A stretch of DNA of 64,000 nucleotides from Octopus sinensis (Eukaryota), in the NCBI RefSeq assembly GCF_006345805.1, contig NC_043000.1:31930001-31994000 (forward strand), written 5' to 3'. Below the pieces are notes generated by a model. The model searched no databases. It worked only from the letters and a program-made list of their open reading frames with translations, and had not been told where the DNA came from. The position numbers were made by a program, and so were the translations under genes. Below, piece after piece: positions 10,371-59,691 of the stretch (position 1 is its first letter; each line of letters begins with the position of its first letter).

Positions 10371-12250
10371 TTCATTATCATCTTCTTTCAGTAGTGTTTC
10401 CATTTCTTGCCGAGTGTCTTCCTGACACCTAGGGCAGAGAAGCGCATTGTATACATTGGTAGGCCATTAAAATAAGCACATCAGATAGTTCATTTACATA
10501 GACGTGTGATAGAGAAAAGGTGGAAGAAAGGCAATGAGAAAGGGAAAAATATAAAAGAAAAAGTAAACAAAGAAAAATAGGAAAAGGAGAAAGAAAATTC
10601 TGTAACAATTCACTTCTCAATTCGTGTGACGTAGCAATTAAGACAATCTTTTGCACTTCCTGCATGGATGCTAAGCCAGGGATGATTCTTAAATAATTTT
10701 CAGTTCCTTCCTTGATCATTCCAAGTGCTCCTACAATCACTGATATTGTAACCGTCTTGAGATGCCACATCTTTTCGATTTCGATTAGCAAATCTTTATA
10801 TCTTCTGAGCTTATCAATTTCCTTTGCCGAGATATTATAGCCACAGGCTATGCTCGTTTCGATCAATAAATAGACTTTATTCTTTTGATCTTTCACAACA
10901 ATATCTGGTTTGTTTGTTTTGACGGTCCGGTCTGTACTTACTAGGTAGTCCACTGTCTCAATCCCATCGTTTCAGTATCGGCACTTTGGGTCTACATTTT
11001 TCATCACGTTGGCTTTATAGTTCCGGGACAGTAAGCTCTGATATTGAGCAGCCAAGATAAAGCCTTCACTCTCAGCCTTTAGTCCTGAGCTCTGTAGCCA
11101 CTGATGGGTGTGCTTCTGGTCTACATCGGCTGGGTTGCTACGGGCCACATATTTGCCATGCAGAGGTTTTTCTTCTCACTTATCAGCCGATTGTTCAAGC
11201 GCGTTTTGCTTTGCTATTGATTTCACCTATTTTGCAACTACAGTTGCTGCACTTCCCTCATGTAGTTCAACCTGGGAATTATAAACTCACTTTAAAATGT
11301 TTTGTTCTCATTCATAGCAGAATGAAGCTTCTCCCTTCTTTCATGGTTTTCAACGAGCTTTAGCATTCAGTTGTTAGATGTTTCAAAATATTTTGCCTGT
11401 CCATTTGTGGTGGTTTTGTAACAGATTTCAAAATGGATCAAGCCTCGACATCCTTGAGCTCTGTGTAGACAAAGATGATCTGCGTCTGCCTTTGGGTGGT
11501 GCATCTTATTTCAAGTCAGCAGCTTACGGATTTTCCTGTCAATCTTCCTTATTTCACTCATATTCCAGTTCAACATTGAAACTGTTAATAACAACCGGAG
11601 TTACGTGCATTTAACTCGGATTTTAGGACTGCTCAAACTCTCCTGTAACACTCCTTCCTGATCTTCACTTTCATACTTGCATATTGAATTCCAGAGCCCT
11701 CATTTATTCCGAGGTATTTGTAAGTTTGTTCCTGCTCGAGTTCTTTCATGATTGTGTCAACATCCAACACTACCGAATGCGAAGTCTTCAGTTTCCCTCT
11801 CCGGAAAGTGGCCTTGGCATATTTATGAAGACCAAATTCCATCTCAATGTCATCACTGAAAGCTTTCACAGTACGTAGTAGGTCTTCAAGCTCATTATTG
11901 TCTTTGCCACAGAGTTTTAAGTCGTCCATTTAAATAGATGACTTATTTTCTTGTCGCCAATTTTATATCCATACCTTGTTCTGTTAAGTTCACTTGTAAG
12001 GGGTATTAGGGCTATACAGAAAATTAAAGTTGAAAGTGAGTCACCTTGGAAAATGCGGCAGTTGATATTATTACTTTTTTTTTGTAGGCACAGAGTGGTA
12101 CAGTTGGAGATTCGTATTCCACTTTGACATGTTGTGTTTCAGGAAGCTAGAAATCACCAGAGAGATTCTGAAGATATCCATCGATTTCAAGATCCACAAA
12201 TACGGTATTCTGTCGAAGGCCTTTTTAAATCATTCATATAAAATAGATGA
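10370..12250 (-). mobile_element. Dong-type LINE 3' half
   Basis: ORFs 11633-11929 (MDDLKLCG..YKYLG) and 10429-10953 (KTNKPDIVVKD..LIETSI..KYKDL). The 3' UTR resembles 53467-53640. Confidence 0.88.
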
Positions 12251-13340: not shown

Positions 13341-13373
13341 AATTCTTGCATTAATATATTTCAATATATTTAA

Positions 13374-13788
13374 GGCGGCGAGCTGGCAGAAACGTTAGCA
13401 CTCCGGGCGAAATGCGTAGCCGTATTTCGTCTGCCGTTACATTCTGGGTTCAAATTCCACCGAGGCCGACTTTGCTTTTCATCCTTTCGGGGTCGATAAA
13501 TTAAGCACCAGTTATGCACTGGGGTCGATGTAATCGACTTAATCCGTTTGTCTGTCCTTGTTTGTCCCCTCTATGTTTAGCCCCTTTGTGTGCAGTAAAG
13601 AAATAGGCATTTCGTCTGCCGCTACGTTCTGAGTTCAAATTCCACCGATGTCGACTTTGCATTTCATCCGTTTGGGGTCGATAAATTAAGCACCAGTTAC
13701 GCACTGGGGTCGATGTAATCGACTGAATCTGTTTGCCTGTCCTTGTTTGTCCCCTACGTGTTTAGCCCCTTGTGGGTAGTAAAGAAAT
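13374..13788 (+). mobile_element. SINE family A, tandem dimer with 20-bp TSD
   Basis: ggcggcgagctggcagaa head and gagttcaaattcc B box. The second unit lacks the head. TSD atatatttcaatatatttaa at 13354-13373 and 13789-13808. Confidence 0.92.
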
Positions 13789-14356
13789 ATATATTTCAAT
13801 ATATTTAAGTGTACATATGTATGAGTGCATATATGTGTACAAGTGTGTGCACATGTATGCATGTATGTGTGCGCAAGTTTGCACGTGCGTGTACATTTGT
13901 ATGTACGCATATACGTGTGCATGTGCGCGTGTGTGCATGCATGTGTTTAACCTAATCAATATTATTTCTAATTGATTGATAAAAAAGAGAAAACTACCGA
14001 CTCCCAATGCTCTGAGAGACTCGCAAATGCTGAGCACAACAGTCCAGTTTTCTGAGAGCCATGATCTGTTTCATTATACTTAAAACACTTAACAGTAATA
14101 AATGTACAACTGGGATTTCTGCAGCCTACTTAAAGAAGAAGGCGAACCACACACGGTTGATTATTTAATCATTTTGTTTCAATTACAAGACGCAATATGG
14201 TCGTCGGTTGTATTAAGACCTGGCTTTTTTTGAAAGATAGAAAATATGACTAAATATTTATAGTAGTTAAAGTAGTTTTAACGGAATATATGGAGCATTA
14301 AAGAGCTCTCAAGGATCAATTGTGTGTGCGTGTGTGTGTGTACATATATACCTATA

Positions 14357-14588
14357 TATTTCTTTACTGCCCACTAGGGGCTAAGCATAGAGGGGAGAAA
14401 CAAGGACAGACAAAGGGATTAAGTCGATTACATCGACCCCAGTGCGAAACTGGTACTTTATTTATCGACCCCGAAAGGATGAAAGCAAAGTCGACCTCGG
14501 CGGAATTTGAACTCAGAGTGTAACGACAGACGAAATACCGCTAAGCATTTCGCCCGGCGCGCTAATGTTTCTGCCAGCTCGCCGCCTT
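14357..14588 (-). mobile_element. SINE family A monomer
   Basis: Reverse complement of the 13374 first unit. Confidence 0.9.
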
Positions 14589-15674: not shown

Positions 15675-16020
15675 AATGTGTTGAGAGGGATTCTTTGGGG
15701 TTTTAAAAATTTACCTCTGGAAATATGGATGTTTCGTTCAACATCCTTAAACAATCCTTATTCAGGGACCTTTTGAGCAGGATGGGCTACTCGACCAGAA
15801 GAAAATTCTAAGTGGGCCCTACCTGAAAGGTCATGCGCTGTTTATCTTGATATGAGATCACCATGTCGCGCACATATAGTTGTGATGCATGTGCCTGGTG
15901 TACCCTTATCAGACGGGTAGTCATGATGGGTATACTGGGCTTCGTATATTTTACCCCAGTGTCACTTTGATGGCATGCACTGCTCTCTCACTCAATAATA
16001 ATAATAATAATAATAATAAT
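15675..16020 (+). mobile_element. Non-coding (TAA)n-targeted element E, 5'-truncated copy
   Basis: Reverse complement of 46573-46900; ends ctctctcactc + (aat)n. Confidence 0.85.
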
Positions 16021-16235
16021 TTCTACTAAAGGCACTAGGCCTGAAATTTGGGGAGGGGTGACTGATTGATTACATCGACCCCCAGTGTTTCACTGGTACT
16101 TGTTTCATTGACTCCGAAAGGATGAAAGGCAAAGTCGAACTCAGCGGAATTTGAACTCCGAACATGAAGACCGACGAAATCACACTAAGCGTTTCGCCCG
16201 GCGTGCTAACGATTCTGTCAACTCACTAACTTAAG
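16021..16235 (-). mobile_element. SINE family A-related copy with (ATT)n tail
   Basis: Reverse-complement family A core with an alternative tail ending in att repeats. Confidence 0.75.
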
Positions 16236-16550
16236 AATAAAAATGATAATAATAATCAGCTTAAAGTTTTTAACCATGTACTGGATAAAGTAAATAATCC
16301 AATATTAGGAGATCTTGGACCTTGACTGGAAAAAAAGTAGGTTTTTTTTTTATTGCGCACGGAAATTGAACCCACATCTCTTAATTTTGTGATAAGTGTG
16401 CTAACAGATTACACCATACTATCCTATCATAGCAATGTTTTTTTGTGTGAGCGTGTTATTTTGAAAAAACAAACAAACGCGTGTTTTCTACGTTAAATGG
16501 AAAAGCGGTGACGAGTGACAATTTAGTAAATAATAATTTTAGCTTAAAAA

Positions 16551-17332
16551 GGCGGCGAGCTGGCAGAAACGTTAGCACGCCGGGCGAAATGCGTAGCCGT
16601 ATTTCGTCTGCCGTTACGTTCTGAGTTCAAATTCCGCCGAGGTCGACTTTGCCTTTCATCCTTTCGGTGTCGATTAAATAAGTACCAGTTCCGCATTGGG
16701 GTCGATGTAATCGACTTAATCCGTTTGTCTGTCCTTGTTTGTCCTCAATGTGTTTAGCCCCATGTGGGTAGTAAAGAAATAGGTATTTCGTCAGCCACTA
16801 CATTCTGAGTTCAAATTCCGCGGAGGTCGACTTTGCCTTTCATCCTTTCGGTGTCGATTAAATAAGTACCAGTTCCGCATTGGGGTCGATGTAATCGACT
16901 TAATCCGTTTGTCTGTCCTTGTTTGTCCTCAATGTGTTTAGCCCCATGTGGGTAGTAAAGAAATAGGTATTTCGTCTGCCACTACGTTCTGAGCTCAAAT
17001 TCCGCCGAGGTCGACTTTGCCTTTCATCCTTTCGGGGTCGGTTAAATAAGTACCAGTTCCGCACTAGGGTCGATCTAATCGACTTAATCCGTTTGTCTGT
17101 CCTTGTTTGTCCTCAATGTGTTTAGCCCCATGTGGGTAGTAAAGAAATAGGTATTTCGTCTGCCACTACGTTCTGAGCTCAAATTCCGCCGAGGTCGACT
17201 TTGCATTTCATCCTTTCGGTGTCGATTAAATAAGTGCCAGTTCCGCATTGGGGTCGATGTAATCGACTTAATCCGTTTGTCTGTCCTTGTTTGTCCTCTC
17301 TGTGTTTAGCCCCTTGTGGGCAGTAAAGAAAT
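16551..17332 (+). mobile_element. SINE family A tetramer (184-bp period) with 18-bp TSD
   Basis: One headed unit plus three headless units, junctions at about 16776, 16960 and 17144. TSD aataattttagcttaaaa at 16532-16549 and 17336-17353. Confidence 0.93.
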
Positions 17333-17681
17333 TAAAATAATTTTAGCTTAAAACTTTTCAGCGATCATCATGAATTAGTCTAACAAGCACACGACGAAAA
17401 AAAAAGTGGTATTTTAGTATGCATGGGAATCAAACTCACACCTCTTATATTTGCAAAATTGTAACTCTTAAATCTAACGGAAAGAAGTGAGTGGGGAGAC
17501 TGGTGTAGTCGATGAACACGTTTATCACGAATATAAGAGGTATGGCTTCGATTCCCATGCGTAGTAAAAACTCGCTTTTTTCCGTTGAAAGCTTATTTGT
17601 CACAATATCACACTATTTTCTTTGGTCGATATACACCGATCGCTCATAAGGTTTAAGCTTATAAATATTATTATTAACAGA

Positions 17682-17712: not shown

Positions 17713-17921
17713 GTGTATTTGTGTGTGTTTGTCCCCCTAGCATTGCTTGACAACCGATGCTGGTGTGTTTACGTCCCCGTCACTTAGCGGTTCGGCAAAA
17801 GGGACCGATAGAATAAGTACTGGGCTTACCAAGAATAAGTCCCGGGGTCGATTTGCTCGACTAAAGGCGGTGCTCCAGCATGGCCGCAGTCAAATGACTG
17901 AACAAGTAACAGAGTAACAGA

Positions 17922-25683: not shown

Positions 25684-26456
25684 TACATACGTATATATAT
25701 GCATATATATGCATATGTATACGCATATATACATATATATATATATATATATCGTTGAATCTAACGAAAGATCATTTGTTTCGTTCGAAAATTTCATTCT
25801 CTCCCTTCCTCTCTATCTCTCTCTCTCTCTCTCTCTCCCCTCTAACCATGCAACCAAGCACACTGATGCTTACATTTATATATATATATATATATATATA
25901 CAACAAACACACGTACACACACTCACACACACACACGCACGCACGCGCACGCACACACACGCACGCACGCGCACACACACATTTGTGTGTGTGTATATGT
26001 ATGTATTCATGAATGTCACAATTCCAACAGAAGATCAAGACTGCAATAATTAATAACGAAATGACAAACTAAGTTCCCATATCGAAATATTAATAATTAC
26101 AGAATTAACACATATCTTAGAAATATTTTTTTTAAAAACTGCTGTGGCATAATTAACACAGACAATATTTCATGCAATAATCTAACAAAGACAACAACGT
26201 CTTTGTTATTCTGAACATGTGTGTGTAATATTATGTGTGGTGTGTATGGGACGAATGTGATTGTACGTGTGTGTATTTGAAAACATCTTTGTCGTGATGT
26301 GTACGTGGCGAATTTAATGTGTGGCTTTACGTTTATGTATATGAAAACGTTTTCTCTCATAGTTCGTATGTGAATGAGGAGAATCACTGTGTCGTATAGG
26401 TAAGCAAAACAGTAATTGTCTACGAAACTGAGGAAGAAAGAGTCAGTAAATATATA

Positions 26457-26688
26457 TTTCTTTATTGCCCACAAAGGGGCTAAACATAGAGGGGACAAAC
26501 AAAGACAGACAAAGGGATTAAGTCGATTACATCAACCCCAGTGCGTAACTGGTACTTTATTTATCGACCCCGAAAGGATGAAAGGCAAAGTCGACCTCGG
26601 CGAAATTTGAACTTAGAACGTGAAGACAGACGAAATACGGCTACGTATTTCGCCCGGCGTGCTAACGATTCTGCCAGCTTGCCGCCTT
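26457..26688 (-). mobile_element. SINE family A monomer
   Basis: Reverse complement of the family A consensus seen at 16551. Confidence 0.9.
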
Positions 26689-36121: not shown

Positions 36122-37215
36122 TGTTTCTTTATTAGCCACACAGGGCTGCACACAGATAGAACAAATTACAAGGTAGAGCTTTTCTTTTGAAGGTTTAAAA
36201 AAAAAAAAAAAAAAGGAAGGGGGAGTTTCGATCAAAAGGGATCGTAAAAGGAGAGAAAGAGGACAAAAAAAGGGGGGTTAAAAAAAAAAAAAAAGGGGGA
36301 GAGGAAAAAAAATTGATCAATAGGGATCGTTATCACAGAAATGTCAATATGAAGTGTAAAGGGGAGGACAGGTGAGGTTTACCCGTGGAAAGAGAAGCCT
36401 ACGGAAAAGACCACGGTAACCTCGGTCAATGAAGTCACATTTTATATTTCTTTTTTTTTTTTTTTTTTTTTTTTGCAAATAAGCAACTCTCTGTTTTCGA
36501 TTTCTGGGTTCATAGGACTATGCTCAAGGTGGCTTCGTCATTCATACGTGCCATTCTTGCTACATTCACCCATCTTTTTTTAAAACATTCGCTAGACAAA
36601 ACTTGCCTCTCTACTCTCACTTTCCTTTTCAAGTGGTACTTGAAGAAGTTGATGAGAGATTGACCAGAGAGGAAAGTGTTTGTCTCCAATCCTTTCAGAC
36701 GCGTCCACCAGATACATTCTTTCGCCATAGCCACAAGGATGATGAAAATAGCTCTTCCTTCCCGTTTGAAGGAAGGAGGCGTGACAATATTGACGATAGA
36801 CTCAGCTGATAAACCGACTCGTCCCACACGTGACAGCAGTTGTTCGACATAAGCCCACAGGTCGGAAATTGTTGGACACTGAACGAGTGCGTGCAGAACG
36901 GTTTCGTCGCTCTGACCGCATCTCGGGCAGGTCGGCCCCGTGTTTCTCGAGCCGTGTCTGTAGAGCTTATCCCGAACGGGTAGCGCTTCTCGGTAGCACT
37001 GCCAGGCCAGGGATCTCTGGAAGTTGTCCATGGGCCCTGGCCCGAAAGTCGTCCCGAACAGGCGGGTCAGGTACTCCTCGTCGACGTCCAGGTTCGCCCC
37101 GAGCTCGTCGTCGTACCTCCCCTCCACTAAACCCCTATAGAATGCTTTGGTTGTGTTGAAGTCACTTAAGGTCGACCCAGGACGGCAGAGTTGCTTGAGA
37201 GCAACGCGACACTCG
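36121..37215 (-). mobile_element. Tx1/L1-clade LINE, 5'-truncated, young
   Basis: 248-aa open frame 36510-37256 with WQCYREALPVRDKLYRHG..CPRCGQSDETVLHALVQC (zf-RVT-like). The 3' UTR has AATAAA, then (TATC)n. Confidence 0.85.
36510..37215 (-). CDS. Tx1/L1 ORF2 C-terminal fragment (RT-associated zinc finger)
   Basis: CxxC..H..C motif after an LPVRDKL motif. The N-terminal ~14 aa of the listed ORF probably come from flanking DNA. Confidence 0.75.
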
Positions 37216-37261
37216 CGAGAGATTAGCAAATATATAATTCCTTCCAATTTTGACACATGGC

Positions 37262-42544: not shown

Positions 42545-45500
42545 TAGTTTTATTTTTATAGCGTGCTTTCACTTCACTACCGAGCGCAGCTCTGTGTGCC
42601 TTGGGTATGTGCTGTGATTTGTTGTGATGTTCTGATGGTTATTGTATGGAAAGTGTTCTGCGTAGGATGTGTGCAGTGCCTAGTAGTGCAATTTTCTGTA
42701 TGTTATATGTGTTTGTAAGTCCTGGTGTTTTTGTTATGTATTTGTCTGAATATTTTTTATCATGCATAATGCACTTACTATGATAGGAATTGTTTCTGTT
42801 TTCAGGTTCCACATTCTAGTTACCTCTATATCCAGGTCTTTGTATTTTGAGAGTTTCTCCATTTCTTTTAGAGACACGTTGTCATCTGCCGGTATTGATA
42901 CATCAATTAGAAAGCATTTTTTTCTTCATGATCTCTGACAACTATATCTGGTCTTTTGGCCTTAATTTCTCTATCTGCGTGTATCGGCATATCCAGAGTA
43001 TGGTTGCTTTCTCGTTTTCTGTGACCTTTTCTGGTGTGTGCCTATACCATCTTTTTTCTTTGTTATTTCATATGTTGGCATAGCTTCCAATGTATGTAGG
43101 TTCCAACTCTGTCATGTCTGGAATATATTCCTTCTTAGCCAGGACTGGGCAGCCAGAGATAATATGATTTATTGTTTCTTGTCCATCTCCACATATTCTG
43201 CAGTTACTTGTAATATTCTTTTCATTATATGTTTTTGGTAATTTCTGGTGGGGAGGCTTTGGTCTTGTGCTGCAATTAAAATCCCTCTGTCTCTGCTTTG
43301 AGTCCTGAGCTTCTCAACCATTGCTGGGATTTTTCTTTGTCTATTTCTTTTGCGTTTAGTTTAGTGCAGTATTTACCATGAAGGGGCTTTTCTTGCCATC
43401 GTTTTATCATGGCTCGTTGCTGTTCTATTTTTAGTTTGGATTTCATTTGTTTTATACTTTTGTTGTTTCTTCTCATCTTTCTTCTTCTTCTTTGTGTTTA
43501 TTAGGTGGTATGATTTCTTGTTTGTATTTGTCAGCTTCCTTAATACTGAGAACAGTTTTTTTTGTTTTGCTCGTGTTTTGCTGCTATCTGGATCAGTTTT
43601 CCTTCCTTCTGAAGTAGGTATTTTTGCGCAGTCCTATGGTGGTTATTTTATAGTAGTTTTCCAGCTGTATAAGGCCTCTACCACCTTCTATACGTTGTAT
43701 ATATAGTCTTTCTATGTCAGATTTTGGGTGATGCATCCTAGATCCTGTCAGTATTTTTCTTGTTTTCCTATCTATTTTGGACAGTTTCATTTCGTATCCA
43801 GTTAAGGATATTGTAGCTGTAACTTATAACTGGGACAGCTAAAGTGTTGATACCTATTATCTTGTTTTTAGCATTGAGCTCTGTTTTTAGTATTGATCTA
43901 ACTCGTCTATAATATTCTTTTTTTATTTTCTTTCATTTGTGTGTGTTGTGTCTTATCTAGTTCATGGATTCCTAAGTATTTGTAAGTTTGGCTTTGGTTT
44001 AATTCTTTTATTTCATTGGTTTTATCTAGTGTGATGTTGTTACTCTTAACTAGTTTTCCTCTTTTCAGGGTTACTTTGGCGCATTTTTCTAATCCAAATT
44101 TCATATCTATTTCTTTGGTAAATCCATGAACTGTCTTTAATAGTGTTTCCAGCTGTTTGTCATTTGCAGCGTATAGTTTTAGGTCATCCATATATAAAAG
44201 GTGGCTGATCGTTTTGCCGTAACATTTATATCCGCATCCAGTTCTATTTAGCATATCAGATAGAGGTGACAGTGCCAAGCAGAAAAGGAGTGGAGAGAGC
44301 GTGTCTCCCTGGAATATTCCTCTTCTAATGGGGATGTCTTTGGTTTTCATGAGTCCCTCTTTTGTTTGGAGGTGTAGGACTGTTTGCCATTTATTCATAG
44401 AGTGCTCTATGAATTTTATGATTGTTGGTGCTACTTTGTTAATGGCTAGTGTTTCGAGGATCCATGTGTGGGGGATGCTATCAAACGTCTTTTTGTAGTC
44501 AATCCAGGCCATACTGAGGCCTTTCTTCTTTCTGTGGCTGTCTTCAATTATGGCTTTATTAATCATTAGTTGATCTTTACAGCCATATGAGCCCTTGCGG
44601 CATCCTTTCTGCTCTTCTGGGAACAGTTTGTTTTCGTCCAGGTGCTTGTTCAGCCTTTGCGATATCACTGCAGTAAATGCCTTGAACATAGTAGGGAGGC
44701 AGGTTATTGGTCTGTAGTTTTCTGGTTTTGTTGTTTCATTTGATTTGGGAATTAAGATGGTTTTTCCCCTTCGTGAGCCATTCAGGCATTGTCTCTGGCT
44801 CTGCTAGTATGCTGTTAAAGTTTTCAGCCAGCTTTTTGTGCATTCCTGTTAGATATTTCAACAAGAAGTTGGGGATCTTGTCATGCCCGAGTGCCTTCCA
44901 GTTGCTTAGTTTTTGCAGTGCCTGGTGACCTCTTCAGTTGTTATGGGGGTCAAAGTTGTTCAGATGCCGAGTTTGTTATTTTCATACTCCTTTTTTTTGG
45001 CTGTTCGTTCGCCGACCATATTTCTTTCCAGAATTCTTCCAATTCTTCTGCCGTTGGTGCTGCAGTAACTTCTATTTTATTTTTGCCCAGTTCTTGGTAG
45101 AACTTTTTGGGGTCGGAGTTGAACTTTTTGTTCTGTTCAAAGAAGCGTTGGCGTTTCTCGTACCGGCGGATTCTTTGAGCTTTGGCAAGGATATCTTGCT
45201 TCAGCTTTTCTTTTATCTCCGGCAAATCTTTTTCTGTGATGTTATATTTGCGGAGCATTTTTGTTCTCTTTTTGTTGCTCAGTAGCGTTGCTTGTTGCTG
45301 ATTTCATTAAGAATCGACAGGTCTTTTCTAATTTTTTTTATTTTGTTTTGGATGTTATTTATCCACAGGGTTTGTTTGGGTGGTGGTACTCCTGTTTGGG
45401 CGGGTTTGGGTGAGTATCCAGCTTCTTTTGTGGCTGCAGTGGCTGCTGCGTATATCAAGTCATTTAGTTCAGTGATATCACTTTTTTTTGTTTCAGTGGC

Positions 45501-46498
45501 TAGTTCAGTGACGGCTAGGTTTATGTTGTTTATAATTGGTGTTGTTATTGCGTTTATTTTTATTCTTAGGAGGTATGGTCGGTGGTCCATTTTGGGCTCT
45601 GTGGTTTTCATTTCTTTGATTATTTTATTTTTTATATTATCATAATCATTAGGCTCCCCTTCGTTGTTTACATCGTGTTTGTTGGGAATGTTGCTTTTGT
45701 CTTCGTGTTTTACAGTTTCAGTGTTTATATTATTGGGCATTGTTGTGTGGCTTCTATCTACATTTTCCTGGTGTATTTTTTCTTTTAATGTTCTATTTCT
45801 ATTTCTGATATTTTTTGGCTTTGAGAAGTATCTTCGTACGTTAGCTAATTTATTAGGGTTCATTGCTGTATCCAAGTCTATATCTCTATTATTTCCTTCC
45901 ATATTTATATGTATGTGTTGTTGTATTTTCATTTTGTGGGTAGAGCATTGCTGTGAAGTATGCGTGTAAGATAGAATGTATTCCTCACGTGTCCATTTAC
46001 GTCTTTTGGGTTTTAATTGCGGGACATGAGGTACAACGTCCGGCCCATTATTTTGACGGTCGTCATTTTCGTAGGGTACCGGTCCGTTTATTTCTGTTGT
46101 CACATATTTCGCACGTGTAGTTTTTCGTACATTTTTTGTTGTAGGTTTAATGTACGTACCGCTCGATTGTTATTCTTGGTTGTTGAATAGTATCGGTGGC
46201 ATTTAATTTCTTCGTTTCCTGTACATGGTGTTTGAGGTCGGGGATGATCGTGTTGTTCCACGCATGTTTACATGTGTGTGTTAGAGGTGGAGATAATATC
46301 GAGTCAAAATACATCATTTCGTTTCGAAAATAGTAATAAAATTTCAATTAGTATTACTTACTCGGATATAGTCCAATTCTTTGTTAGTAAATCTTTGGCT
46401 CCATAGGGTGTCCTTTGTTTCGATGTTTGTGGATAGATTTCGGAGCTCTGTATTTTCCTTCTTACACCTTAAACGTCCCCGGTGTCTTCTTCTTCTTC

Positions 46499-46573: not shown

Positions 46574-47128
46574 GAGGGAGAGAGCAGTGCATGCCATCAA
46601 AATGACACTGAGGTAAAATATACGAAGCCCAATATACCCATCATGACTACCCGTCTGATAAGGGTACACCAGGCACATGCATCACAACCATATGTGCGCG
46701 ACATGGTGATCTCATATCAAGATAAACAGCACATGACCTTGCAGGTGGGGCCCAGTTAGAATTTTCTTCAGGTTGAGTAGAGTAGCCCCCGCTCAAAAGG
46801 TCCCTGAATAAGGGTTGTTTAAGGATGTTGAAAGAACCACCCATGTTTCCAGAGTTGAATTATTCAAACCCAAAGAATCCCTCTCAACACATGGCTATGA
46901 TGCTCCCCCACTACTTCTGCTCGTGATCAGAGATGCACATATCGTCAGCCACTAAGGGATATGCTCAACTGGTTAAGGTCAAACAACTGACAAGCAAATC
47001 TGTGGTATTGAGCAGAATATTTGCTGTAGCCCATCTTTTATATCAAGACAAAACAATGGACATGATAACACTTCCAATCAGTTAAGATCAGAAGCCATGA
47101 GAGCCACTGCCTGGTACTGCATCAGGGC

Positions 47129-47783: not shown

Positions 47784-47900
47784 GTGTGAGAGAGCAATGC
47801 ATGCCATCAAAGTGACACTGGGGTAAAATATAGGGTACCCAATATACCCACCATGACTACTCGTCTGATAAGGGTACACCAGGCGCGTGCATCACAACTG
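47783..47900 (-). mobile_element. Element E, 3' ~115 bp only
   Basis: Matches 46573-46690. Confidence 0.85.
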
Positions 47901-51607: not shown

Positions 51608-53397
51608 TAGTATATTTTTTATATCGTGCTTTCCCTTCACTACCGAACGCAGCTCTGTGTGCCTTGGGTATGTGCTGTGATTTGTTTTGATGCTCTGATT
51701 GTTATTGTATGGAAAGTGTTCTGATAGGATGTGTGCAGTGCCTAGTAGTGCAATTTTCTGTATGTTATATGTGTTTGTAAGTTCTGGTGTTTTTGTTATG
51801 TATTTGTCTGAATATTTTTTGTATCATGCCTAATGCACCTATTATGATAGGAATTGTTTCTGCTTTTAGATTCCACATTCTGGTTACCTCTATTTCCAGG
51901 TCTTTGTATTTTGAAAGTTTCTCCATTTCTTTTAGAGACACGTTGTCATCCGCTGGTATTTTTTCTTCATGATCTCTGACAACTATATCTGGTCTTTTGG
52001 CCTTAATTTCTCTATCTGTGTGTATTGGCATATCCCAGAGTATGGTTGCTTTCTCGTTTTCTGTGACCTTTTCTGGTGTGTGCCTATACCATCTTTTTTC
52101 TGTTGTTATTCCATAATTTTGGCATAGTTTCCATTGTATATAGGTCCCAACTCTGTCGTGTCTGTGAATATATTCCTTCTTAGCCAGGACTGGGCAGCCA
52201 GAGATAATATGATTTATTGTTTCTTGTCCATCTCCACATATTCTGCAGTTACTTGTTATATTTCTTTTCATTATATGTTTTTGGTAATTTCTGGTGGGGA
52301 GGCTTTGGTCTTGTGCTGCAATTAAAAATCCTTCTGTCTCTGCTTTGAGTCCTGAGCTTCTTAACCATTGTTGGGATTTTTCTTTGTCTATTTCTTTTGC
52401 ATTTAGTTTAGTGCAGTATTTGCCATGAAGGGGCTTTTCCTGTCATCGTTTTATCATGGTTGGTTGCTGTTCTAGTTTTAGTTTGGATTTCATTTGTTTT
52501 ATAGCTTTGTTAATTCTTCTTCTTCTTCTTCTTCTTCTTCTCTTCTTCTTCTTCTTCTTCTTCTTATTCTTCTTTTCTCTTCTTCTTCTCTTCTTATTCT
52601 TCTTCCTCCTTTCTCCTTCTTCTTCTTCTTCTTCTTCTTCTTTCTTCTTCTCTTCTCTTCTTCTCTTCTTCTTCTTCTTCTTCTTCTTCTTCTTCTTCTT
52701 CTTCTCTTCTTCTTCTTCTCTCTTCTTCTTCTTCTTCATATTTGTTAGGTGGTATGATTTCTGTTTGTATTTGTCAGCTCCTTAAATACTGAGAACGTTT
52801 TTTGTTTTGCTCATGTTTTGCCGCTATTCGTATCAGTTTTCCTTCCTTCTGAAGTAGATATTTTTGCAGTCGTATGGTGATTATTTTATAGTAGTTTTCC
52901 AGCTGTATAAGGCCTCTACCACCGTCTATACGTTGTATATATAGCCTTTCTATGTCAGATTTTGGGTGATGCATCCTAGATCCTGTCATTATTTTTCTTG
53001 TTTTCCTATCTATTTTGGTCAGTTAATTTAGTGTCCAGTTAAGGATATTGTAGCTGTAACTTATAACTGGGACGGCTAAAGTGTTGATACCTATTATCTT
53101 GTTTTTAGCATTGATCTAACTCGTCTATAATATTCTTTTTTTAATTTTCTCTTTCATTTGTGTGTGTTGTGTCTTATCTAGTTCATGGATTCCTAAGTAT
53201 TTGTACGTTTGGCTTTGGTCTAATTCTTTTATTTCATTGGTTTTATCTGGTGTGATGTTGCCACTCTTAATTAGTTTTCCTCTTTTCAGGGTTACTTTGG
53301 CGCATTTCGCTAATCCAAATTTCATATATATTTCTTTGGCAAATCCATGAACTGTCTTTAGTAGTATTTCCAGCTGTTAGTCATTTGTAGCGTATAG

Positions 53398-53400
<3 letters not shown>
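51604..53400 (-). mobile_element. Dong LINE 3' 1.8 kb, same subfamily as 42541
   Basis: Near-identical to 42541-44170; contains a (CTT)n expansion; (TTA)n on both sides. Confidence 0.93.
52514..52738. repeat. (CTT)n/(GAA)n expansion inside a LINE ORF
   Basis: About 225 bp, versus a ~30-bp ctt-rich stretch in the sister copy at 43465-43492. Confidence 0.9.
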
Positions 53401-53466
<66 letters not shown>

Positions 53467-56400
53467 GTTTTTTCCTTCTTTCTTCAAATTTTCTTCCGTT
53501 TCTCGCCGAGTGTTTTCCATACACCTAGGGCAGAGAAGGGCATTGTATGCATTCCCAGATTACACGCGCAAATTCACAGATAACATACGTATTTAAAAAT
53601 TAATAAATAAATAAATTCATGGATGGATGGATGTTATTTTCACAGCGATAGTGCTCTTCTCAGTACATGAGCCGTTCCAGTTAATACGATTTTTTGCACT
53701 TCCGGTAGGGATGGTAAGCCTAGAATCATCTTCAAATAGGTTTCAGTGCCTTTTTTTATCATTCCTAGAGATCCTACAATCACTGGTACTGTAGTCGCCT
53801 TGAGATGCCACATTTTTTCAATTTCCATTAGCAGGTCTTTATATTTACTAATCTTGTCAAATTCTTTCGCCGCTATATTGTGATCACAGGGAATACTCAT
53901 GTCAATTAATAAACACATCCTTTTTGTCTGATCTTTTATAATGATATCCAGTTTATTGGCTTTTATAGTCCTGTCGGTCAGCACGGGGAAATCCCATAGA
54001 ATCGACACATTTTCTCCCTCAGTCACAGCTTCAGGATGATGTTTATACCATTTGTCAGCGGTTTTGATTTTATAATGCCGACATATTGTCCAGTGTAAAT
54101 ACTGGCCGACTCTGTCATGTCTTGCTTTATATTCTGCAGATGCTAAGACTCTACACTTTGAGATTAGGTGGTCTATTGTTTCAATCTCATCGTTACAGAA
54201 TCGGCATTTTAGGTCAGCTCCATTTTTCATCACATTGGCTTGGTAGTTCCGGGTAAATAAGCTTTGGTCTTGAGCAGCTAATATGAAACCTTCACTCTCT
54301 GCTTTTAGCCCTGAACTTCGTAACCATTGGTGCGTGTGTTTCTGGTCGACATCAGCTTGTTTGCTACGGACCACATACTTGCCATGGAGATGTTTCTGTT
54401 CCCATCTGCTAGCTAAATTTTCATGTGCTTTTGTCTTTGCAATTAATTTTATTTTCTTTGCAGCTGCAGTTGGCTCATTTCCTTCAGCCTGCTCAATCTG
54501 GCGGGTATCTAAGAGATCAGCAGCGAATTTTTTGGTCTCTTTGAGAACAGAGTGAAGTTTTTTAGGTCTTTCATGTTTTTCAACAAGTTTTAGCATCCAA
54601 TCGTTGGTTGCTTCAAGGTATTTGGCCAGTACGATTGTGGTGGTTTTGTATGTAAGTTCAAGCTGGATCAAACCTCGACCTCCCAGAGCTCTGGGAAGGT
54701 AAAGGCGATCCACGTCTGCCTTTGGATGGTGAATCTTATTACAAGTCAGTAGCTTGCGGATTTTCCTGTCAATTTTCATTATTTCACTAGTATTCCAGTT
54801 AAGCACATTGAAGCTATAAAGAACAACTGGTACTGCTAAGGAATTTATGGCTAAAACCTTATTATATGCATTCAGCTCAGACTTCAGGACTGCTCGAACT
54901 CTTCTATAACATTCTTTCCTAACCTTCTCTTTCATGCTTGCATGCTGGATACCAGAGCCTTCATTTGTTCCTAGGTATTTATAGGTTTGTTCCTGCTCAA
55001 GTTCCTTTATTACTATTTCGACATCTAATTCGATTGAACTAGACTTTACCAATTTCCCTTTCTTAAAAGTGGCTTTGGCACACTTTTCAAGGCCAAACTC
55101 CATCCCGATATCATCACTGAATCCTTTGACAGTATGTAATAATCCTTCAAGATCTTCATCATCTTTGCCATATAGCTTTAAGTCATCCATATAAAATAGA
55201 TGGCTTATTTTCTTGTTGTCAATTTTGTAGCCATATCCTGTTCTATTCAGTTCACTTGAGAGTGGTATTAGTACTATGCAGAATATTAGTGGTGAAAGTG
55301 AGTCACCTTGGAAAATTCCACAGTTTATGCTAATGTTGTTTGATTGCAATACTCCATTAGAATGATATAATTGGAGCTTCGTGTTCCATAGTGACATATT
55401 ATACTTAAAAAAATCTGAAATCACAGGAGAAATTTTGAAAATGTCCAGCGATTTCAGAATCCACGAATGTGGTATGCTGTCAAAGGCTTTTTTATAATCA
55501 ATCCATGAAGAGCTGAGATTTCTGCACTTGTTATGGCAGTTCTCAAGGATCATGCGATTAATTAGGAGCTGATCTTTGCATCCGTATGAGCCCCGTCTGC
55601 ATCCTTTTTGTTCAGTGGGAAAGAGGTTCTTCTCTTCCATAAACGTATATGTTTTCTCTACTAGAATAGATGTCAAGATCTTATAGGTAGTAGATAAACA
55701 TGTATAGGCCGATAGTTTTTTGGGTCTTTCGTTTTGTTATTTTTGGAAAGGAGGTAAGTAATACCGTTTGCCATCCAATGTGGTGTTTTTTTTGGGTCTT
55801 TCATAATACTATTAAATAGTATTACTAACATTTTGTGTGCGGAAGAGAGTGATGAGAGCCAGAAATTTGGTACTCTATCAATACCAGGGGATTTCCACTT
55901 ATGAGCCTTCGTTAGTGCTCTTCTTAGGTCGGCGATTGAGATGTCTTCCCATACCTGTTCGTGTAGATTTCTGTAATCATCTTGGGTGCGTTTGATCCAC
56001 TCTGCATTTTCATTGTATGGTTTCTCATCACTCCAGATCCCCTTCCAAAAGTTTTCAACTTCTTCCATTAGGGGTGGATTTTCAATGGTTATTTTTTCTT
56101 TCCCTATTTCCTTGTAAAATGATTTGGCATTGGATTTGAACATCTTATTTTGTTGTAGAATTTGATTCTTTTCTCAAATCTGCGTATTCTCTGAGCTTTT
56201 GCTTGAACTTTTGTTTAAGTGTTTCTTTCGCTGACATTAGTTCTTCTCTTGTTGAATGTCCATATTTTCTCACAATCTTCCTGCCTTTCTTGATCTTACA
56301 TCATTTCCAGAGATTAGCTCAGTTAATATTGATATCTCCTTCGCAATGATTCAATTTCAGTTTCAATTCTACTCCTCCAGTTTGATTTTCTTTTCGAATT

Positions 56401-58394: not shown

Positions 58395-58775
58395 TGGCAG
58401 AAACGTTAGCACGCTGGACCAAATGTTTAACGGTACTTCACTCGCCACTACATTCTGAGTTCAAATTCTACCGAGGTCGACTTTATCTTTCATCCTTTCG
58501 GGGTCGATAAATTAAATACCAGTTACGCACTGGGGTCGATATAATCAACTTAATCCGTTTGTCTGTCCTTGTTTGTCCTCTCTGTGTTAGTCCCTTGTGG
58601 GTAGTAAAACATAGGTATTTCACTCGTCACTACATTCTGAGTTCAAATTCTACCGAAGTCGACATTGTTTTTCATCCTTTCGGGGTCGATAAATTAAGCA
58701 CCAGTTGCGTACTGGGGTCGATGTAATCGACTGTTCCCTTCCCGCCATATTTCAGGACTTGTACATTTGGTAGAA
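58395..58775 (+). mobile_element. SINE family A dimer, older
   Basis: Two units joined at aaaacatag-gtatttc (58606-58621). Confidence 0.8.
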
Positions 58776-59691
58776 AGGATTACTACTGTTGTTGTTGTAT
58801 TTGTCATCGTTGTCGTTGTCATCATCCTCCTCTTTTTCCTTCTCTTCCTCCTTCTCCTCCTCCTCATCATCATTATCATTATCATGACCACTTTCTAATC
58901 ATAAATGAAATTTCTATATTTAGTTTCAGGCAAGAAATTCGTTAGACACATGTTAGCAGCCCAAATTCTGCTGGATAATTCATTCATGAATCTATGTATC
59001 TTAATTCTCGCTGATAATAATTTTGTTTATCCTGATTAATATTTGCCATTCTTAAACAACAGGTGTGGCTCGGTTTTAAGTTTATCGCTGATTTTATCAA
59101 ACCAGTTAATTCCATAGATGTAATATATTGACACTGAATTGAATATGAAAATTTCCGCCAATATATTAATATGAGTTGGCATGCTATTTTATCAATTCTT
59201 GTATACTCGAATGCAGGATTATTAAAATCAATAAATGTTTATTTTATTCGATATTAATCTTATACACTTGTAGCCAATAGTAACTGGCTGCCTTTTATCC
59301 AGATCAAATACAACGTAACTAAATCATACAGGAATGTTAAAATATATAAACAACGTTTCGAAAGTTTAATGAAAAATTAGACTTTATTATCTTCCAGTAA
59401 GAAAATGTGATAAGGTTCGCAGGCACAAGTGATAAAGAACTAATGTAGTTAACATTCTCCTTTGACTTCGAACTCCGATTGGGAGTAGCGAGTTTCTAGT
59501 CCTCCGCCCTACTTGCGTCGAGGCACTTATTATCAGAGAGATAAAGATAATTTCATTTCTGCTGTCTAATTGTTTATATTATTTATCAACCTCCTACATA
59601 AGCCAAAAGAGATTGTTAGATATCAACAAATGAGTGATTTATCTCAACCTACACACAAACCGATTGTATTTATGAAGAAGTGGAGGGGTGG

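What the first reader, a model, noticed from the sequence alone, without database searches (positions are those of the whole stretch)
16532..17353. SINE tetramer with a fixed palindromic junction: possible circular-RNA or template-jump multimerisation
Seen: one full unit plus three headless 184-bp units within one 18-bp TSD. Every junction is GAAATA-GG-TATTTC, where the SINE 3' end (gaaata) is complementary to the internal re-entry point (tatttc). The same junction occurs at 13600 and 58606, giving five junctions at three loci. Inference: the RNA 3' end pairs with the re-entry site, allowing circularisation and rolling reverse transcription or precise RT jumping, reminiscent of retrozyme multimers. 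Post-insertion unequal exchange remains possible, since the units differ at a few sites.
Basis: partly seen in the sequence, partly recalled or inferred. Interest (0 to 1): 0.75.

Follow-up and report, generated by a model that had tools for sequence, protein, structure and literature searches.

The report
Multi-unit SINE with a fixed junction
A short mobile element sits here as one complete copy followed by three copies that lack their front part. All copies are joined at the same point, and this is best read as a multi-unit version of the element that spreads as a block and then gains units by misaligned recombination, not as a product of circular RNA.

Summary
Window 16550-17333 holds a 49-nt tRNA-like head plus four 184-bp units inside a perfect 18-bp target-site duplication (TSD). 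The same in-register junction also occurs in a dimer at 13605/13606 and in an older heterodimer at 58613/58614. Each junction joins the exact SINE 3' terminus (GAAATA) to the base that starts the 3' arm of a 13-bp hairpin in the head. That arm contains the element's only TATTTC.

The circular-RNA, rolling-circle or retrozyme reading is not supported:
- No ribozyme is found.
- The 184-nt unit is not unusually structured.
- The array keeps a head.
- The units cannot have been identical at birth.

The unit variants are mosaic. Differences between the first and last unit cluster at the unit edges (Fisher p=0.002). The tetramer and the 13.4-kb dimer share the same first-versus-later differences at positions 49 and 65.

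Best reading: the junction was made rarely, by joining at the RNA or reverse-transcription stage. It was then inherited in a multimeric SINE lineage that moves as a unit. The dimer grew to a tetramer by in-register homologous exchange.

Recurrent site-specific template jumping remains a live rival. A genome-wide census could not be run with these tools.

The parts
16532..16549 (+). Left target-site duplication (TSD) of the tetramer, AATAATTTTAGCTTAAAA
   Evidence: Identical 18-mer at 17336-17353.
16550..16598 (+). tRNA-like head, SINE positions 1-49. It holds an A-box-like GCTGGCAGAA at position 10 and is present only once in the array.
   Evidence: BLAST query positions 1-49 match only at the first unit. 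A-box and B-box scan.
16581..16610 (+). 13-bp hairpin CGGGCGAAAUGCG-UAGC-CGUAUUUCGUCUG (positions 32-44 paired with 49-61). Its 3' arm begins at the base where headless units start.
   Evidence: Present in the minimum-energy and centroid folds of two copies. 86.5% of cells are paired across 6 copies, against 34-55% when the pairing is slid. The closing pair is G-C in 3 copies and U-G in 3.
16599..16781 (+). Body and tail of unit 1 (positions 50-232), ending GTAAAGAAATA
16782..16965 (+). Headless unit 2 (junction G plus positions 50-232)
   Evidence: 97.3% identical to unit 1; variant table.
16966..17149 (+). Headless unit 3
   Evidence: 95.7% identical to unit 1.
17150..17333 (+). Headless unit 4. 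It is the terminal unit and its 3' edge keeps the family-consensus bases.
   Evidence: 95.1% identical to unit 1.
16776..16789 (+). Junction 1, GAAATA-GG-TATTTC. The same sequence recurs at 16960-16973 and 17144-17157.
   Evidence: It forms the hairpin GAAAU-AGGU-AUUUC in the fold of head plus two units.
17336..17353 (+). Right TSD of the tetramer. The first T4 run after the head lies here, so it is a possible RNA polymerase III stop.
13373..13789 (+). Dimer of the same SINE. The junction is at 13605/13606 (GAAATA-GG-CATTTC), and it is flanked by the 19-bp TSD TATATTTCAATATATTTAA (13355-13373 and 13790-13808).
58395..58790 (+). Older heterodimer, 5'-truncated at SINE position 12. The first unit has the A-type tail. 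After the joint at 58613/58614 comes a headless unit with a B-type tail and a degenerate trinucleotide run.
14357..14587 (-). Monomer copy (G at position 49), with a TSD of about 16 bp
26455..26687 (-). Monomer copy (C at position 49), with a degenerate TSD
16000..16224 (-). B-type relative. It has the same head and body up to position 167, then a different tail ending in (ATT)n.

Best explanation
The element is a 232-nt tRNA-like SINE with a widely conserved central domain. It has no poly-A tail and makes 15-19-bp target-site duplications (TSDs).

Proposed mechanism, in three steps:
1. One or a few times, a complete SINE 3' end (...GAAAUA) was joined to a headless SINE that starts at position 49/50. 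This position is the loop/3'-arm boundary of the head's 13-bp hairpin. The joining happened while the 3' end was free, either as RNA or during target-primed reverse transcription.
2. The resulting multimer is inherited. It keeps one head with the promoter boxes and has no T4 terminator inside, so it can be transcribed and retrotransposed as a block. This would explain why whole arrays sit inside a single TSD and why dispersed loci share the same joint, including its G.
3. Unit number then changes by in-register homologous exchange between units. This could be unequal crossing-over or gene conversion in DNA, or copy-choice during reverse transcription. It would turn a dimer into the tetramer and homogenise the middle of the units, leaving the edges different.

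Shown here: the anatomy, the hairpin position, the mosaic variants, and the asymmetry shared between two loci.
Inferred: inheritance from a multimeric source, and how the first junction was made.
For: Anatomy:
- The array lies within one perfect 18-bp TSD, and the dimer within one perfect 19-bp TSD.
- There is no T4 run in the 785-bp tetramer until the 3' TSD. It has one A box and four B boxes.

The units were not identical at birth and are mosaic:
- Units 1-3 share derived A198, A199 and A213. Unit 4 has the consensus T, C, T.
- Units 2-4 share G49, A64 and C65. Unit 1 has C, G, T.
- Units 3 and 4 share C77.
- Units 1, 2 and 4 share derived T119 and T147.
- Differences between the first and last unit cluster at the edges: 8 of 52 positions against 3 of 132 in the middle (Fisher p=0.002).
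- The haplotype flanking the junction is the same at all three joints. This is expected if one joint was copied.

Links between loci:
- The tetramer and the 13.4-kb dimer share the same asymmetry. The head-adjacent unit has C49 and T65. Later units have G49 and C65. Formation from one RNA, or from sibling RNAs, at each locus does not predict this.
- All four tetramer units share private bases (T126, A129, C142), so they were homogenised while tandem.
- Units of the 13.4-kb dimer differ by about 11%, yet its 19-bp TSD is perfect. This suggests the units were already diverged at insertion, but the evidence is weak (P about 0.1-0.2).

Precedents:
- Arrays of the form TSD-(SINE)n-TSD with headless inner units are described in a bivalve (PMC11481361).
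- SINE-derived tandem arrays and dimeric SINEs that amplify as dimers are described or reviewed in PMC10702118.
Against: - Only five A-type loci could be examined. No genome-wide census or orthologous locus was available.
- Units within a locus resemble each other more than units in the same position across loci. Inheritance therefore needs concerted evolution. Independent formation would give this pattern directly.
- The heterodimer at 58.6 kb has a different tail on its second unit. It is either a separate junction-forming event or a recombinant.
- The 13.4-kb dimer has a T4 run at element position 104, so that copy itself is a poor source element.
- Several informative sites are CpG sites, which are prone to parallel change.
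- The tetramer could equally have expanded at this locus or in its source element. The data do not separate these.
Confidence: 0.5

Rival explanations
1. Recurrent, site-specific joining at each retrotransposition event. Reverse transcriptase copies a SINE RNA up to the hairpin loop (or to the 5' end of an RNA cleaved there), then continues on the 3' end of another SINE RNA. Alternatively, an RtcB-type ligase seals the two RNA ends. In either case the GAAAUA:UAUUUC pairing holds the ends together in a small stem-loop. Repeating the step gives trimers and tetramers within one TSD.
For: - The joint uses the exact 3' terminus and the only complementary hexamer in the element, about 2% by chance.
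- The joint lies at the loop/3'-arm boundary of the strongest hairpin and rebuilds a 5-bp hairpin.
- Three of the five A-type loci in 64 kb are multimers.
- The 58.6-kb heterodimer joins two different tail types at the same point.
- Precedents exist for template switches at specific sites, for double switches within one TSD (PMC2104539), and for RNA ligation before retrotransposition (PMC6789731).
Against: - The nascent cDNA end (...GAAATACC) has the same sense as the acceptor's 3' end. It is not complementary to it, so the palindrome cannot guide a classical microhomology jump. Only RNA-RNA pairing could use it.
- The joint base is G at all three loci, although the heads of two of them have C49.
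- Position 65 also differs between first and later units at those two loci.
- The tetramer units share private middle variants but differ at their edges. This needs later homogenisation in any case.
Confidence: 0.25
2. Ordinary target-primed insertion of one SINE into a resident SINE copy at its internal NN-TATTTC site. The 5' end is resolved by annealing to the homologous resident sequence. The result looks like a perfect in-register headless repeat.
For: - Ordinary 3' junctions look like the multimer junction, with the same 2-nt spacing: GAAATA-TA-TATTTC at 13784-13797 and GAAATA-TA-TATTTaC at the 26.4-kb monomer. By chance, an arm of 6 or more has p=0.0105 and an arm of 5 or more has p=0.035 per site.
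- The 58.6-kb heterodimer fits this model. Its two units share private variants only in positions 49-103 and none after 104. The second unit keeps a resident-type B tail, and both the head and the joint carry G49.
Against: - The model predicts identical bases in the hidden duplication (positions 49 to about 67) of the first and second units. The tetramer and the 13.4-kb dimer each differ there at positions 49 and 65, and at one further position each: 64 in the tetramer and 51 in the dimer.
- The target preference rests on only four insertion sites, and two of them lack the motif.
- No nested insertion with a retained second head, and none in the opposite orientation, is seen in the window.
Confidence: 0.12
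3. Rolling-circle reverse transcription of a 184-nt circular SINE RNA, like retrozyme or viroid-like circles.
For: - The period is constant at 184 bp, and the ends can pair.
- The centroid fold of a single unit pairs its two ends.
Against: - No ribozyme family is matched at the gathering threshold over the window, or at E<=10 over the locus.
- The unit folds no better than shuffled sequence, z=-0.10, with 90 of 200 shuffles as stable.
- The array starts with a head that lies outside the supposed circle.
- The units were not identical at birth, and their differences are subfamily markers clustered at the unit edges.
- The heterodimer has two different tails.
Confidence: 0.03
4. Independent tandem duplication at the DNA level after insertion at each locus (slippage or unequal exchange inside a monomer). 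This would create the junction as well as expand it.
For: - Internal duplication does not disturb TSDs.
- The mosaic unit pattern shows that homologous exchange has acted on the tetramer.
Against: - A monomer has no internal repeat to misalign.
- The same two breakpoints recur at three loci, and one of them is the exact terminal base of the element.
- A DNA duplication limited to the insert would not be expected to end at the SINE/TSD boundary.
Confidence: 0.05

Closest known systems
TSD1-(SINE)n-TSD1 arrays of conserved-domain SINEs in the blood clam Scapharca broughtonii (PMC11481361)
   Same: A single TSD surrounds the whole array. The first unit has a complete tRNA-related head. The inner units are truncated at one fixed point in the head. 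The last unit has the complete tail. The host is also an invertebrate with conserved-domain SINEs.
   Different: In the clam, the first and inner units also have truncated 3' tails. Here every unit carries the complete tail down to its last base, and the same joint is seen at three dispersed loci.
SINE-derived satellites and dimeric SINEs, described or reviewed in PMC10702118 (squamate satellites, jerboa Dip multimers, Alu-type dimers)
   Same: These are tandem units derived from part of a SINE, with a longer terminal unit that reaches the SINE terminus. Unequal recombination is proposed for their expansion. Some SINEs amplify as dimers.
   Different: The arrays here are short (2-4 units), dispersed, and each bounded by its own TSD. 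The unit boundary coincides with the SINE 3' terminus and with a hairpin in the head.
Chimeric retrocopies made by LINE reverse-transcriptase template switching (PMC2104539) or by RtcB ligation of RNAs before retrotransposition (U6/L1, PMC6789731)
   Same: A 5' partner that ends at its exact RNA 3' terminus is fused to a 5'-truncated 3' partner, inside one TSD. Switching at specific template sites and double switches are both documented.
   Different: Here both partners are the same SINE, or its sister type, so the product is a tandem repeat. The truncation point is fixed at a hairpin, and the chimera seems to have become a propagating lineage.
Retrozymes and metazoan hammerhead-bearing tandem repeats (from my own knowledge of that literature, not checked here)
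   Same: Short tandem units of a few hundred nucleotides, associated with retroelements.
   Different: No self-cleaving ribozyme is present, the unit has no strong fold, a promoter head sits outside the repeat, and TSDs are long.

Membership tests
SINE (LINE-mobilised short retroposon with an internal RNA polymerase III promoter) | Dispersed copies, each flanked by its own variable target-site duplication | tested here: met
   Five A-type loci are found. Their TSDs are 18, 19 and about 16 bp, plus one degenerate case.
SINE (LINE-mobilised short retroposon with an internal RNA polymerase III promoter) | Head derived from a tRNA, with A and B boxes | tested here: inconclusive
   An A-box-like GCTGGCAGAA lies at position 10 and a B-box-like GAGTTCAAATTCC at position 74. 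ARAGORN finds no tRNA and Rfam gives no tRNA match even at E<=10.
SINE (LINE-mobilised short retroposon with an internal RNA polymerase III promoter) | 3' tail shared with a partner LINE | tested here: not met
   The tail (positions 168-232) occurs only in the SINE copies within this window. The reverse-transcriptase-encoding LINEs in the window end in (TAA)n. The partner may lie elsewhere in the genome.
CORE-type or other conserved-central-domain SINE superfamily | Central domain of about 45-60 nt shared with SINEs of distant hosts | tested here: inconclusive
   Positions 91-135 match, at 81-96% identity, repeats in 120 or more metagenome contigs that share nothing else with this SINE. It was not compared with a curated CORE consensus. 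Octopus OR1/OR2 are listed as CORE-SINEs in PMC4824008 and PMC4758252, but the source organism of this window was not established.
Dimeric or multimeric SINE lineage that amplifies as a unit | Same internal junction in dispersed copies, each with its own TSD | tested here: met
   The joints at 16781/16782, 13605/13606 and 58613/58614 are in register. Whole arrays lie within TSDs at two of the loci.
Dimeric or multimeric SINE lineage that amplifies as a unit | Position-specific differences between first and later units that are shared across loci | tested here: met
   C49/T65 in first units against G49/C65 in later units, in both the tetramer and the 13.4-kb dimer. This rests on only two loci and two sites.
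Dimeric or multimeric SINE lineage that amplifies as a unit | The whole multimer can be transcribed from the head (no internal terminator) | tested here: met
   No T4 run occurs in the 785-bp tetramer. The first one is in the 3' TSD. The 13.4-kb dimer does have a T4 run at position 104.
Retrozyme or ribozyme-bearing circular-RNA repeat | Self-cleaving (hammerhead) ribozyme in each unit | tested here: not met
   Rfam gives 0 hits at the gathering threshold over the window. At E<=10 over 16400-17500 only two chance hits appear, neither a ribozyme.
Retrozyme or ribozyme-bearing circular-RNA repeat | Highly self-complementary, stable unit RNA | tested here: not met
   The unit folds at -39.5 kcal/mol against a shuffle mean of -39.1, z=-0.10.
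Retrozyme or ribozyme-bearing circular-RNA repeat | A circular RNA of unit length exists | not testable with these tools
   No RNA data are available.
Template-switch or RNA-ligation chimeric retrocopy | Exact 3' end of the 5' partner fused to a 5'-truncated 3' partner inside one TSD | tested here: met
   A232 is joined to position 49/50, and a single TSD surrounds the array.
Template-switch or RNA-ligation chimeric retrocopy | The chimera is formed at the RNA or cDNA stage | not testable with these tools
   This needs RNA data or a retrotransposition assay.

The most novel reading that the evidence does not exclude
The 3'-terminal GAAAUA of one SINE RNA pairs with the UAUUUC arm of a second SINE RNA that has been opened or cleaved in its head hairpin. 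This holds a 3' end and a 5' end together in a small stem-loop, as tRNA exon halves are held in the anticodon stem. The ends can then be sealed by an RtcB-type ligase or bridged by the reverse transcriptase. That would be a structure-guided, repeatable way for a SINE to multimerise at the RNA level. It could also yield 184-nt circles as by-products.
Probability: 0.12. Interest if true: 0.7.

Novelty: new variant of a known kind. Interest (0 to 1): 0.35.

Why it matters
It is rarely clear how interspersed repeats become tandem repeats and how composite SINEs arise.

Here the unit boundary is defined on both sides. One side is the exact RNA 3' terminus. The other is the start of a hairpin arm. 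The boundary recurs at dispersed loci.

This family is therefore a clean case for separating three processes:
- joining at the RNA or reverse-transcription stage,
- inheritance of a multimeric source element,
- recombinational expansion.

If the junction proves to form recurrently, it would show structure-guided template switching or RNA ligation in a non-mammalian LINE/SINE system. If it is inherited, it is an ordinary example of a multimeric SINE subfamily seeding short satellite-like arrays.

Tried and rejected
Searches for more copies of this SINE all failed:
- A metagenome scan with the 21-nt core returned 120 loci. They share only the 45-nt central domain.
- Scans of genome contigs and viral contigs with a junction pattern returned only chance AT-rich matches. 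None is similar to the SINE.
- A protein search with the junction-spanning reading frame (16903-17064, minus strand) found nothing. Orthologous loci therefore could not be fetched.
- A full-text search for three SINE sequence strings found no paper.

Ideas tested and dropped:
- Ribozyme or tRNA identity. Rfam and ARAGORN were negative.
- Classical microhomology-guided template jump. The cDNA end after copying UAUUUC is GAAATAC. This is identical in sense to the acceptor's 3' end, not complementary to it.
- Cleavage by the tRNA-splicing endonuclease as the source of the headless RNA. If the long hairpin is mapped as an anticodon arm plus intron, the splice sites fall near positions 38/39 and 59/60, not at 48/49.
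- Formal covariation support for the hairpin. It is weak: one compensatory pair, and 63 of 500 shuffles reach the observed percentage of paired cells.

Full report
**1. What is there**

The window is AT-rich (about 37% G+C), full of microsatellites, and carries LINE reverse-transcriptase reading frames. It is eukaryotic, invertebrate-like DNA. The source organism was not established.

At 16550-17333 lies one SINE head of 49 nt, followed by four 184-bp units. Tandem Repeats Finder gives period 184, 4.0 copies and 95% matches. BLAST shows one full copy and three copies that start at query position 50, 97.3-95.1% identical to unit 1.

The array is bounded by a perfect 18-bp target-site duplication (TSD) at 16532-16549 and 17336-17353.

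The monomer is 232 nt long. It ends in GTAAAGAAATA with no poly-A tail. Other copies in the window:
- monomers at 14357-14587 (minus strand) and 26455-26687 (minus strand);
- a dimer at 13373-13789 inside a perfect 19-bp TSD;
- an older, 5'-truncated dimer at 58395 to about 58790.

All junctions are in register...ATA | G | G(T/C)ATTTC. The palindrome is perfect only in the tetramer.

**2.

(a) The re-entry site sits at a hairpin. It is the first base of the 3' arm of a 13-bp hairpin in the head, CGGGCGAAAUGCG-UAGC-CGUAUUUCGUCUG (positions 32-44 paired with 49-61).
- The hairpin is present in the minimum-energy and centroid folds of two copies.
- It is retained in six copies: 86.5% of cells are paired, against 34-55% when the pairing is slid.
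- Its closing pair is G44-C49 in three copies and U44-G49 in three. Formal covariation support is weak.
- The SINE's terminal GAAAUA mimics the GAAAU of the hairpin's 5' arm, so each junction rebuilds a 5-bp hairpin, GAAAU-AGGU-AUUUC.
- TATTTC at positions 51-56 is the only complement of 3 nt or more to the 3' end in the element. About 2% of possible re-entry points lie next to it.

(b) The second unit of the 58.6-kb dimer has a different tail. It matches the tail of a sister SINE type at 16000-16224 (minus strand). That type shares positions 1-167 with the A type and ends in (ATT)n.

(c) Ordinary 3' junctions resemble the multimer joint. These are GAAATA-TA-TATTTC at 13.8 kb and GAAATA-TA-TATTTaC at 26.4 kb, with the same 2-nt spacing. 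The per-site chance is 0.0105 and 0.035. The other two insertion sites lack the motif.

**3. Test of the circle, rolling-circle and retrozyme idea**

- No Rfam family reaches its gathering score in the window.
- At E<=10 over 16400-17500 there are only two chance hits, neither a ribozyme.
- The 184-nt unit folds no better than shuffled sequence, z=-0.10.
- The array starts with a head that would lie outside a 184-nt circle.

The units also cannot have been identical at birth:
- Units 1-3 share A198, A199 and A213. These bases are private to this locus. Unit 4 keeps the family consensus T, C, T.
- Units 2-4 share G49, A64 and C65. Unit 1 has C, G, T. Both sets of states also occur at other loci, so they are lineage markers and not new mutations.
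- Units 3 and 4 share C77.
- Units 1, 2 and 4 share derived T119 and T147, where unit 3 has the consensus.

Differences between the first and last unit are concentrated at the unit edges: 8 of 52 positions, against 3 of 132 in the middle (Fisher p=0.002).

**4. What the variant pattern does fit**

The haplotype around the joint is identical at all three joints. It consists of the derived 3' edge, then GAAATAG, then GTATTTCGTC.GCCACTAC. Only the first unit's 5' edge and the last unit's 3' edge differ.

This is the expected footprint of one original joint copied by in-register exchange between the units of a dimer. Inner units are hybrids, and the unit middles become homogenised. All four units share the private bases T126, A129 and C142.

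The exchange could be unequal crossing-over or gene conversion in DNA, or copy-choice between repeats during reverse transcription. It could have happened at this locus or in the source element. The data cannot tell which.

**5. One origin or many?**

Evidence for inheritance:
- The tetramer and the 13.4-kb dimer share the same asymmetry. Heads have C49 and first units have T65. The joint base is G and later units have C65.
- Formation from a single RNA or sibling RNAs at each locus predicts equal bases at these positions.
- Nested insertion predicts identity across the hidden duplication, positions 49 to about 67.
- Both predictions fail at both loci.
- The tetramer has no T4 run before its 3' TSD, so it could be one polymerase III transcript.
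- The 13.4-kb dimer's units differ by about 11% although its 19-bp TSD is perfect. This hints that the units were already diverged at insertion (P about 0.1-0.2, weak).

Evidence against a single simple origin:
- Units resemble their locus-mates more than their positional counterparts at other loci. Inheritance therefore needs concerted evolution.
- The 58.6-kb heterodimer looks like a separate event. Its two units share private variants only in positions 49-103. Its head and joint both carry G49. Its second unit keeps a resident-type tail. This is what insertion of an A-type SINE into a resident B-type copy at the NN-TATTTC site would give, if the 5' end were resolved by homology.

**6. How the first joint was made (inference)**

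The left side of the joint is the exact terminal base of the element. The joint was therefore made while that end was free. Three routes give the same product:
- a template switch by the reverse transcriptase after it has copied the hairpin's 3' arm, or at the 5' end of an RNA cut in the loop;
- RNA ligation of a complete SINE RNA to a headless fragment, with the GAAAU:AUUUC pairing holding the ends in a loop;
- target-primed insertion into a SINE copy.

The palindrome cannot guide a classical microhomology jump. The nascent cDNA end (GAAATAC) has the same sense as the acceptor's 3' end, so only RNA-RNA pairing, or a target preference, could use it.

Precedents exist for site-specific and double template switches within one TSD (PMC2104539) and for ligation before retrotransposition (PMC6789731).

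**7. Comparison with what is known**

- Arrays of the form TSD-(SINE)n-TSD, with a complete first head, headless inner units and a complete last tail, are described in a blood clam (PMC11481361).
- SINE-derived tandem arrays are described in squamates, in a paper that also reviews SINE multimers and dimeric SINEs that amplify as dimers (PMC10702118).
- The distinctive points here are that every unit keeps its complete tail, the other breakpoint is a hairpin boundary, and the joint recurs at dispersed loci.

I file this as a new variant of a known kind, of moderate interest.

**8. Limits**

- Only five A-type loci were available.
- Scans of the public collections gave no further copies.
- No orthologous loci and no RNA data were available.
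- The choice between inheritance and recurrent joining rests on two loci and a handful of sites, some of them CpG sites.

Noticed in passing
window 53399-56143 (minus strand); also 43907-46103, 51765-52271, 10429-10953, 36510-37256: Non-LTR retrotransposon copies. The 678-aa reading frame at 53640-55676 matches Pfam RVT_1 (2.4e-22) and weakly zf-RVT (E=2.6e-4, 22 bits, below Pfam's 27.5-bit cut-off); the frame at 36510-37256 matches zf-RVT above the cut-off. The 3' ends of these elements abut (TTA)n arrays on the plus strand, so the tail is (TAA)n in the elements' own sense. This tail does not match the SINE studied here.
   Followed up: partly
window 16000-16224 (minus strand) and 58614 to about 58790 (plus strand): A sister SINE type. 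It shares the head and body (positions 1-167) with the A type, then has a different tail (...TTTCAGG.CT.GT.C.TTT.GTAGAAA) followed by (ATT)n. Both tail types end in a similar AGTA(AA)GAAAT motif.
   Followed up: partly
SINE positions 91-135 (for example window 16640-16684); loci L001-L120: The 45-nt central domain (AGGTCGACTTTGCCTTTCATCCTTTCGG.GTCGAT...) occurs at 81-96% identity in 120 or more JGI metagenome contigs. These contigs share nothing else with this SINE. It therefore looks like a widely conserved SINE core domain present in other hosts' DNA.
   Followed up: partly
window 15870-16020 (plus strand), 46574-46700 (minus strand), 47784-47900 (minus strand): Another repeat family that ends ...GCATGCACTGCTCTCTCACTC followed by (AAT)n. 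At 15994-16020 its tail abuts the tail of the B-type SINE, tail to tail.
   Followed up: no
window 17400-17451 and 17530-17581; also 16345-16430: An inverted pair of tRNA-like sequences with GGTTCGATTCC-type motifs (52 nt, 81% complementary) lies about 50 bp downstream of the tetramer. A similar piece lies about 120 bp upstream. ARAGORN calls none of them a tRNA.
   Followed up: no
window 16080-16224 versus 16557-16701: The B-type copy and the head plus unit 1 of the tetramer form a 145-nt inverted repeat, 82% complementary and 332 nt apart (I1).
   Followed up: no
window 16550-17334: The CpG observed/expected ratio is 1.23 in the tetramer against 0.76 for the whole window. The array therefore shows no CpG depletion, although several unit differences are changes of the CpG type.
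   Followed up: no
window 17713-17870: A further diverged copy related to the SINE core and body lies about 360 bp downstream of the array. Its matching segments are 73-82% identical to the array (D3-D5).
   Followed up: no
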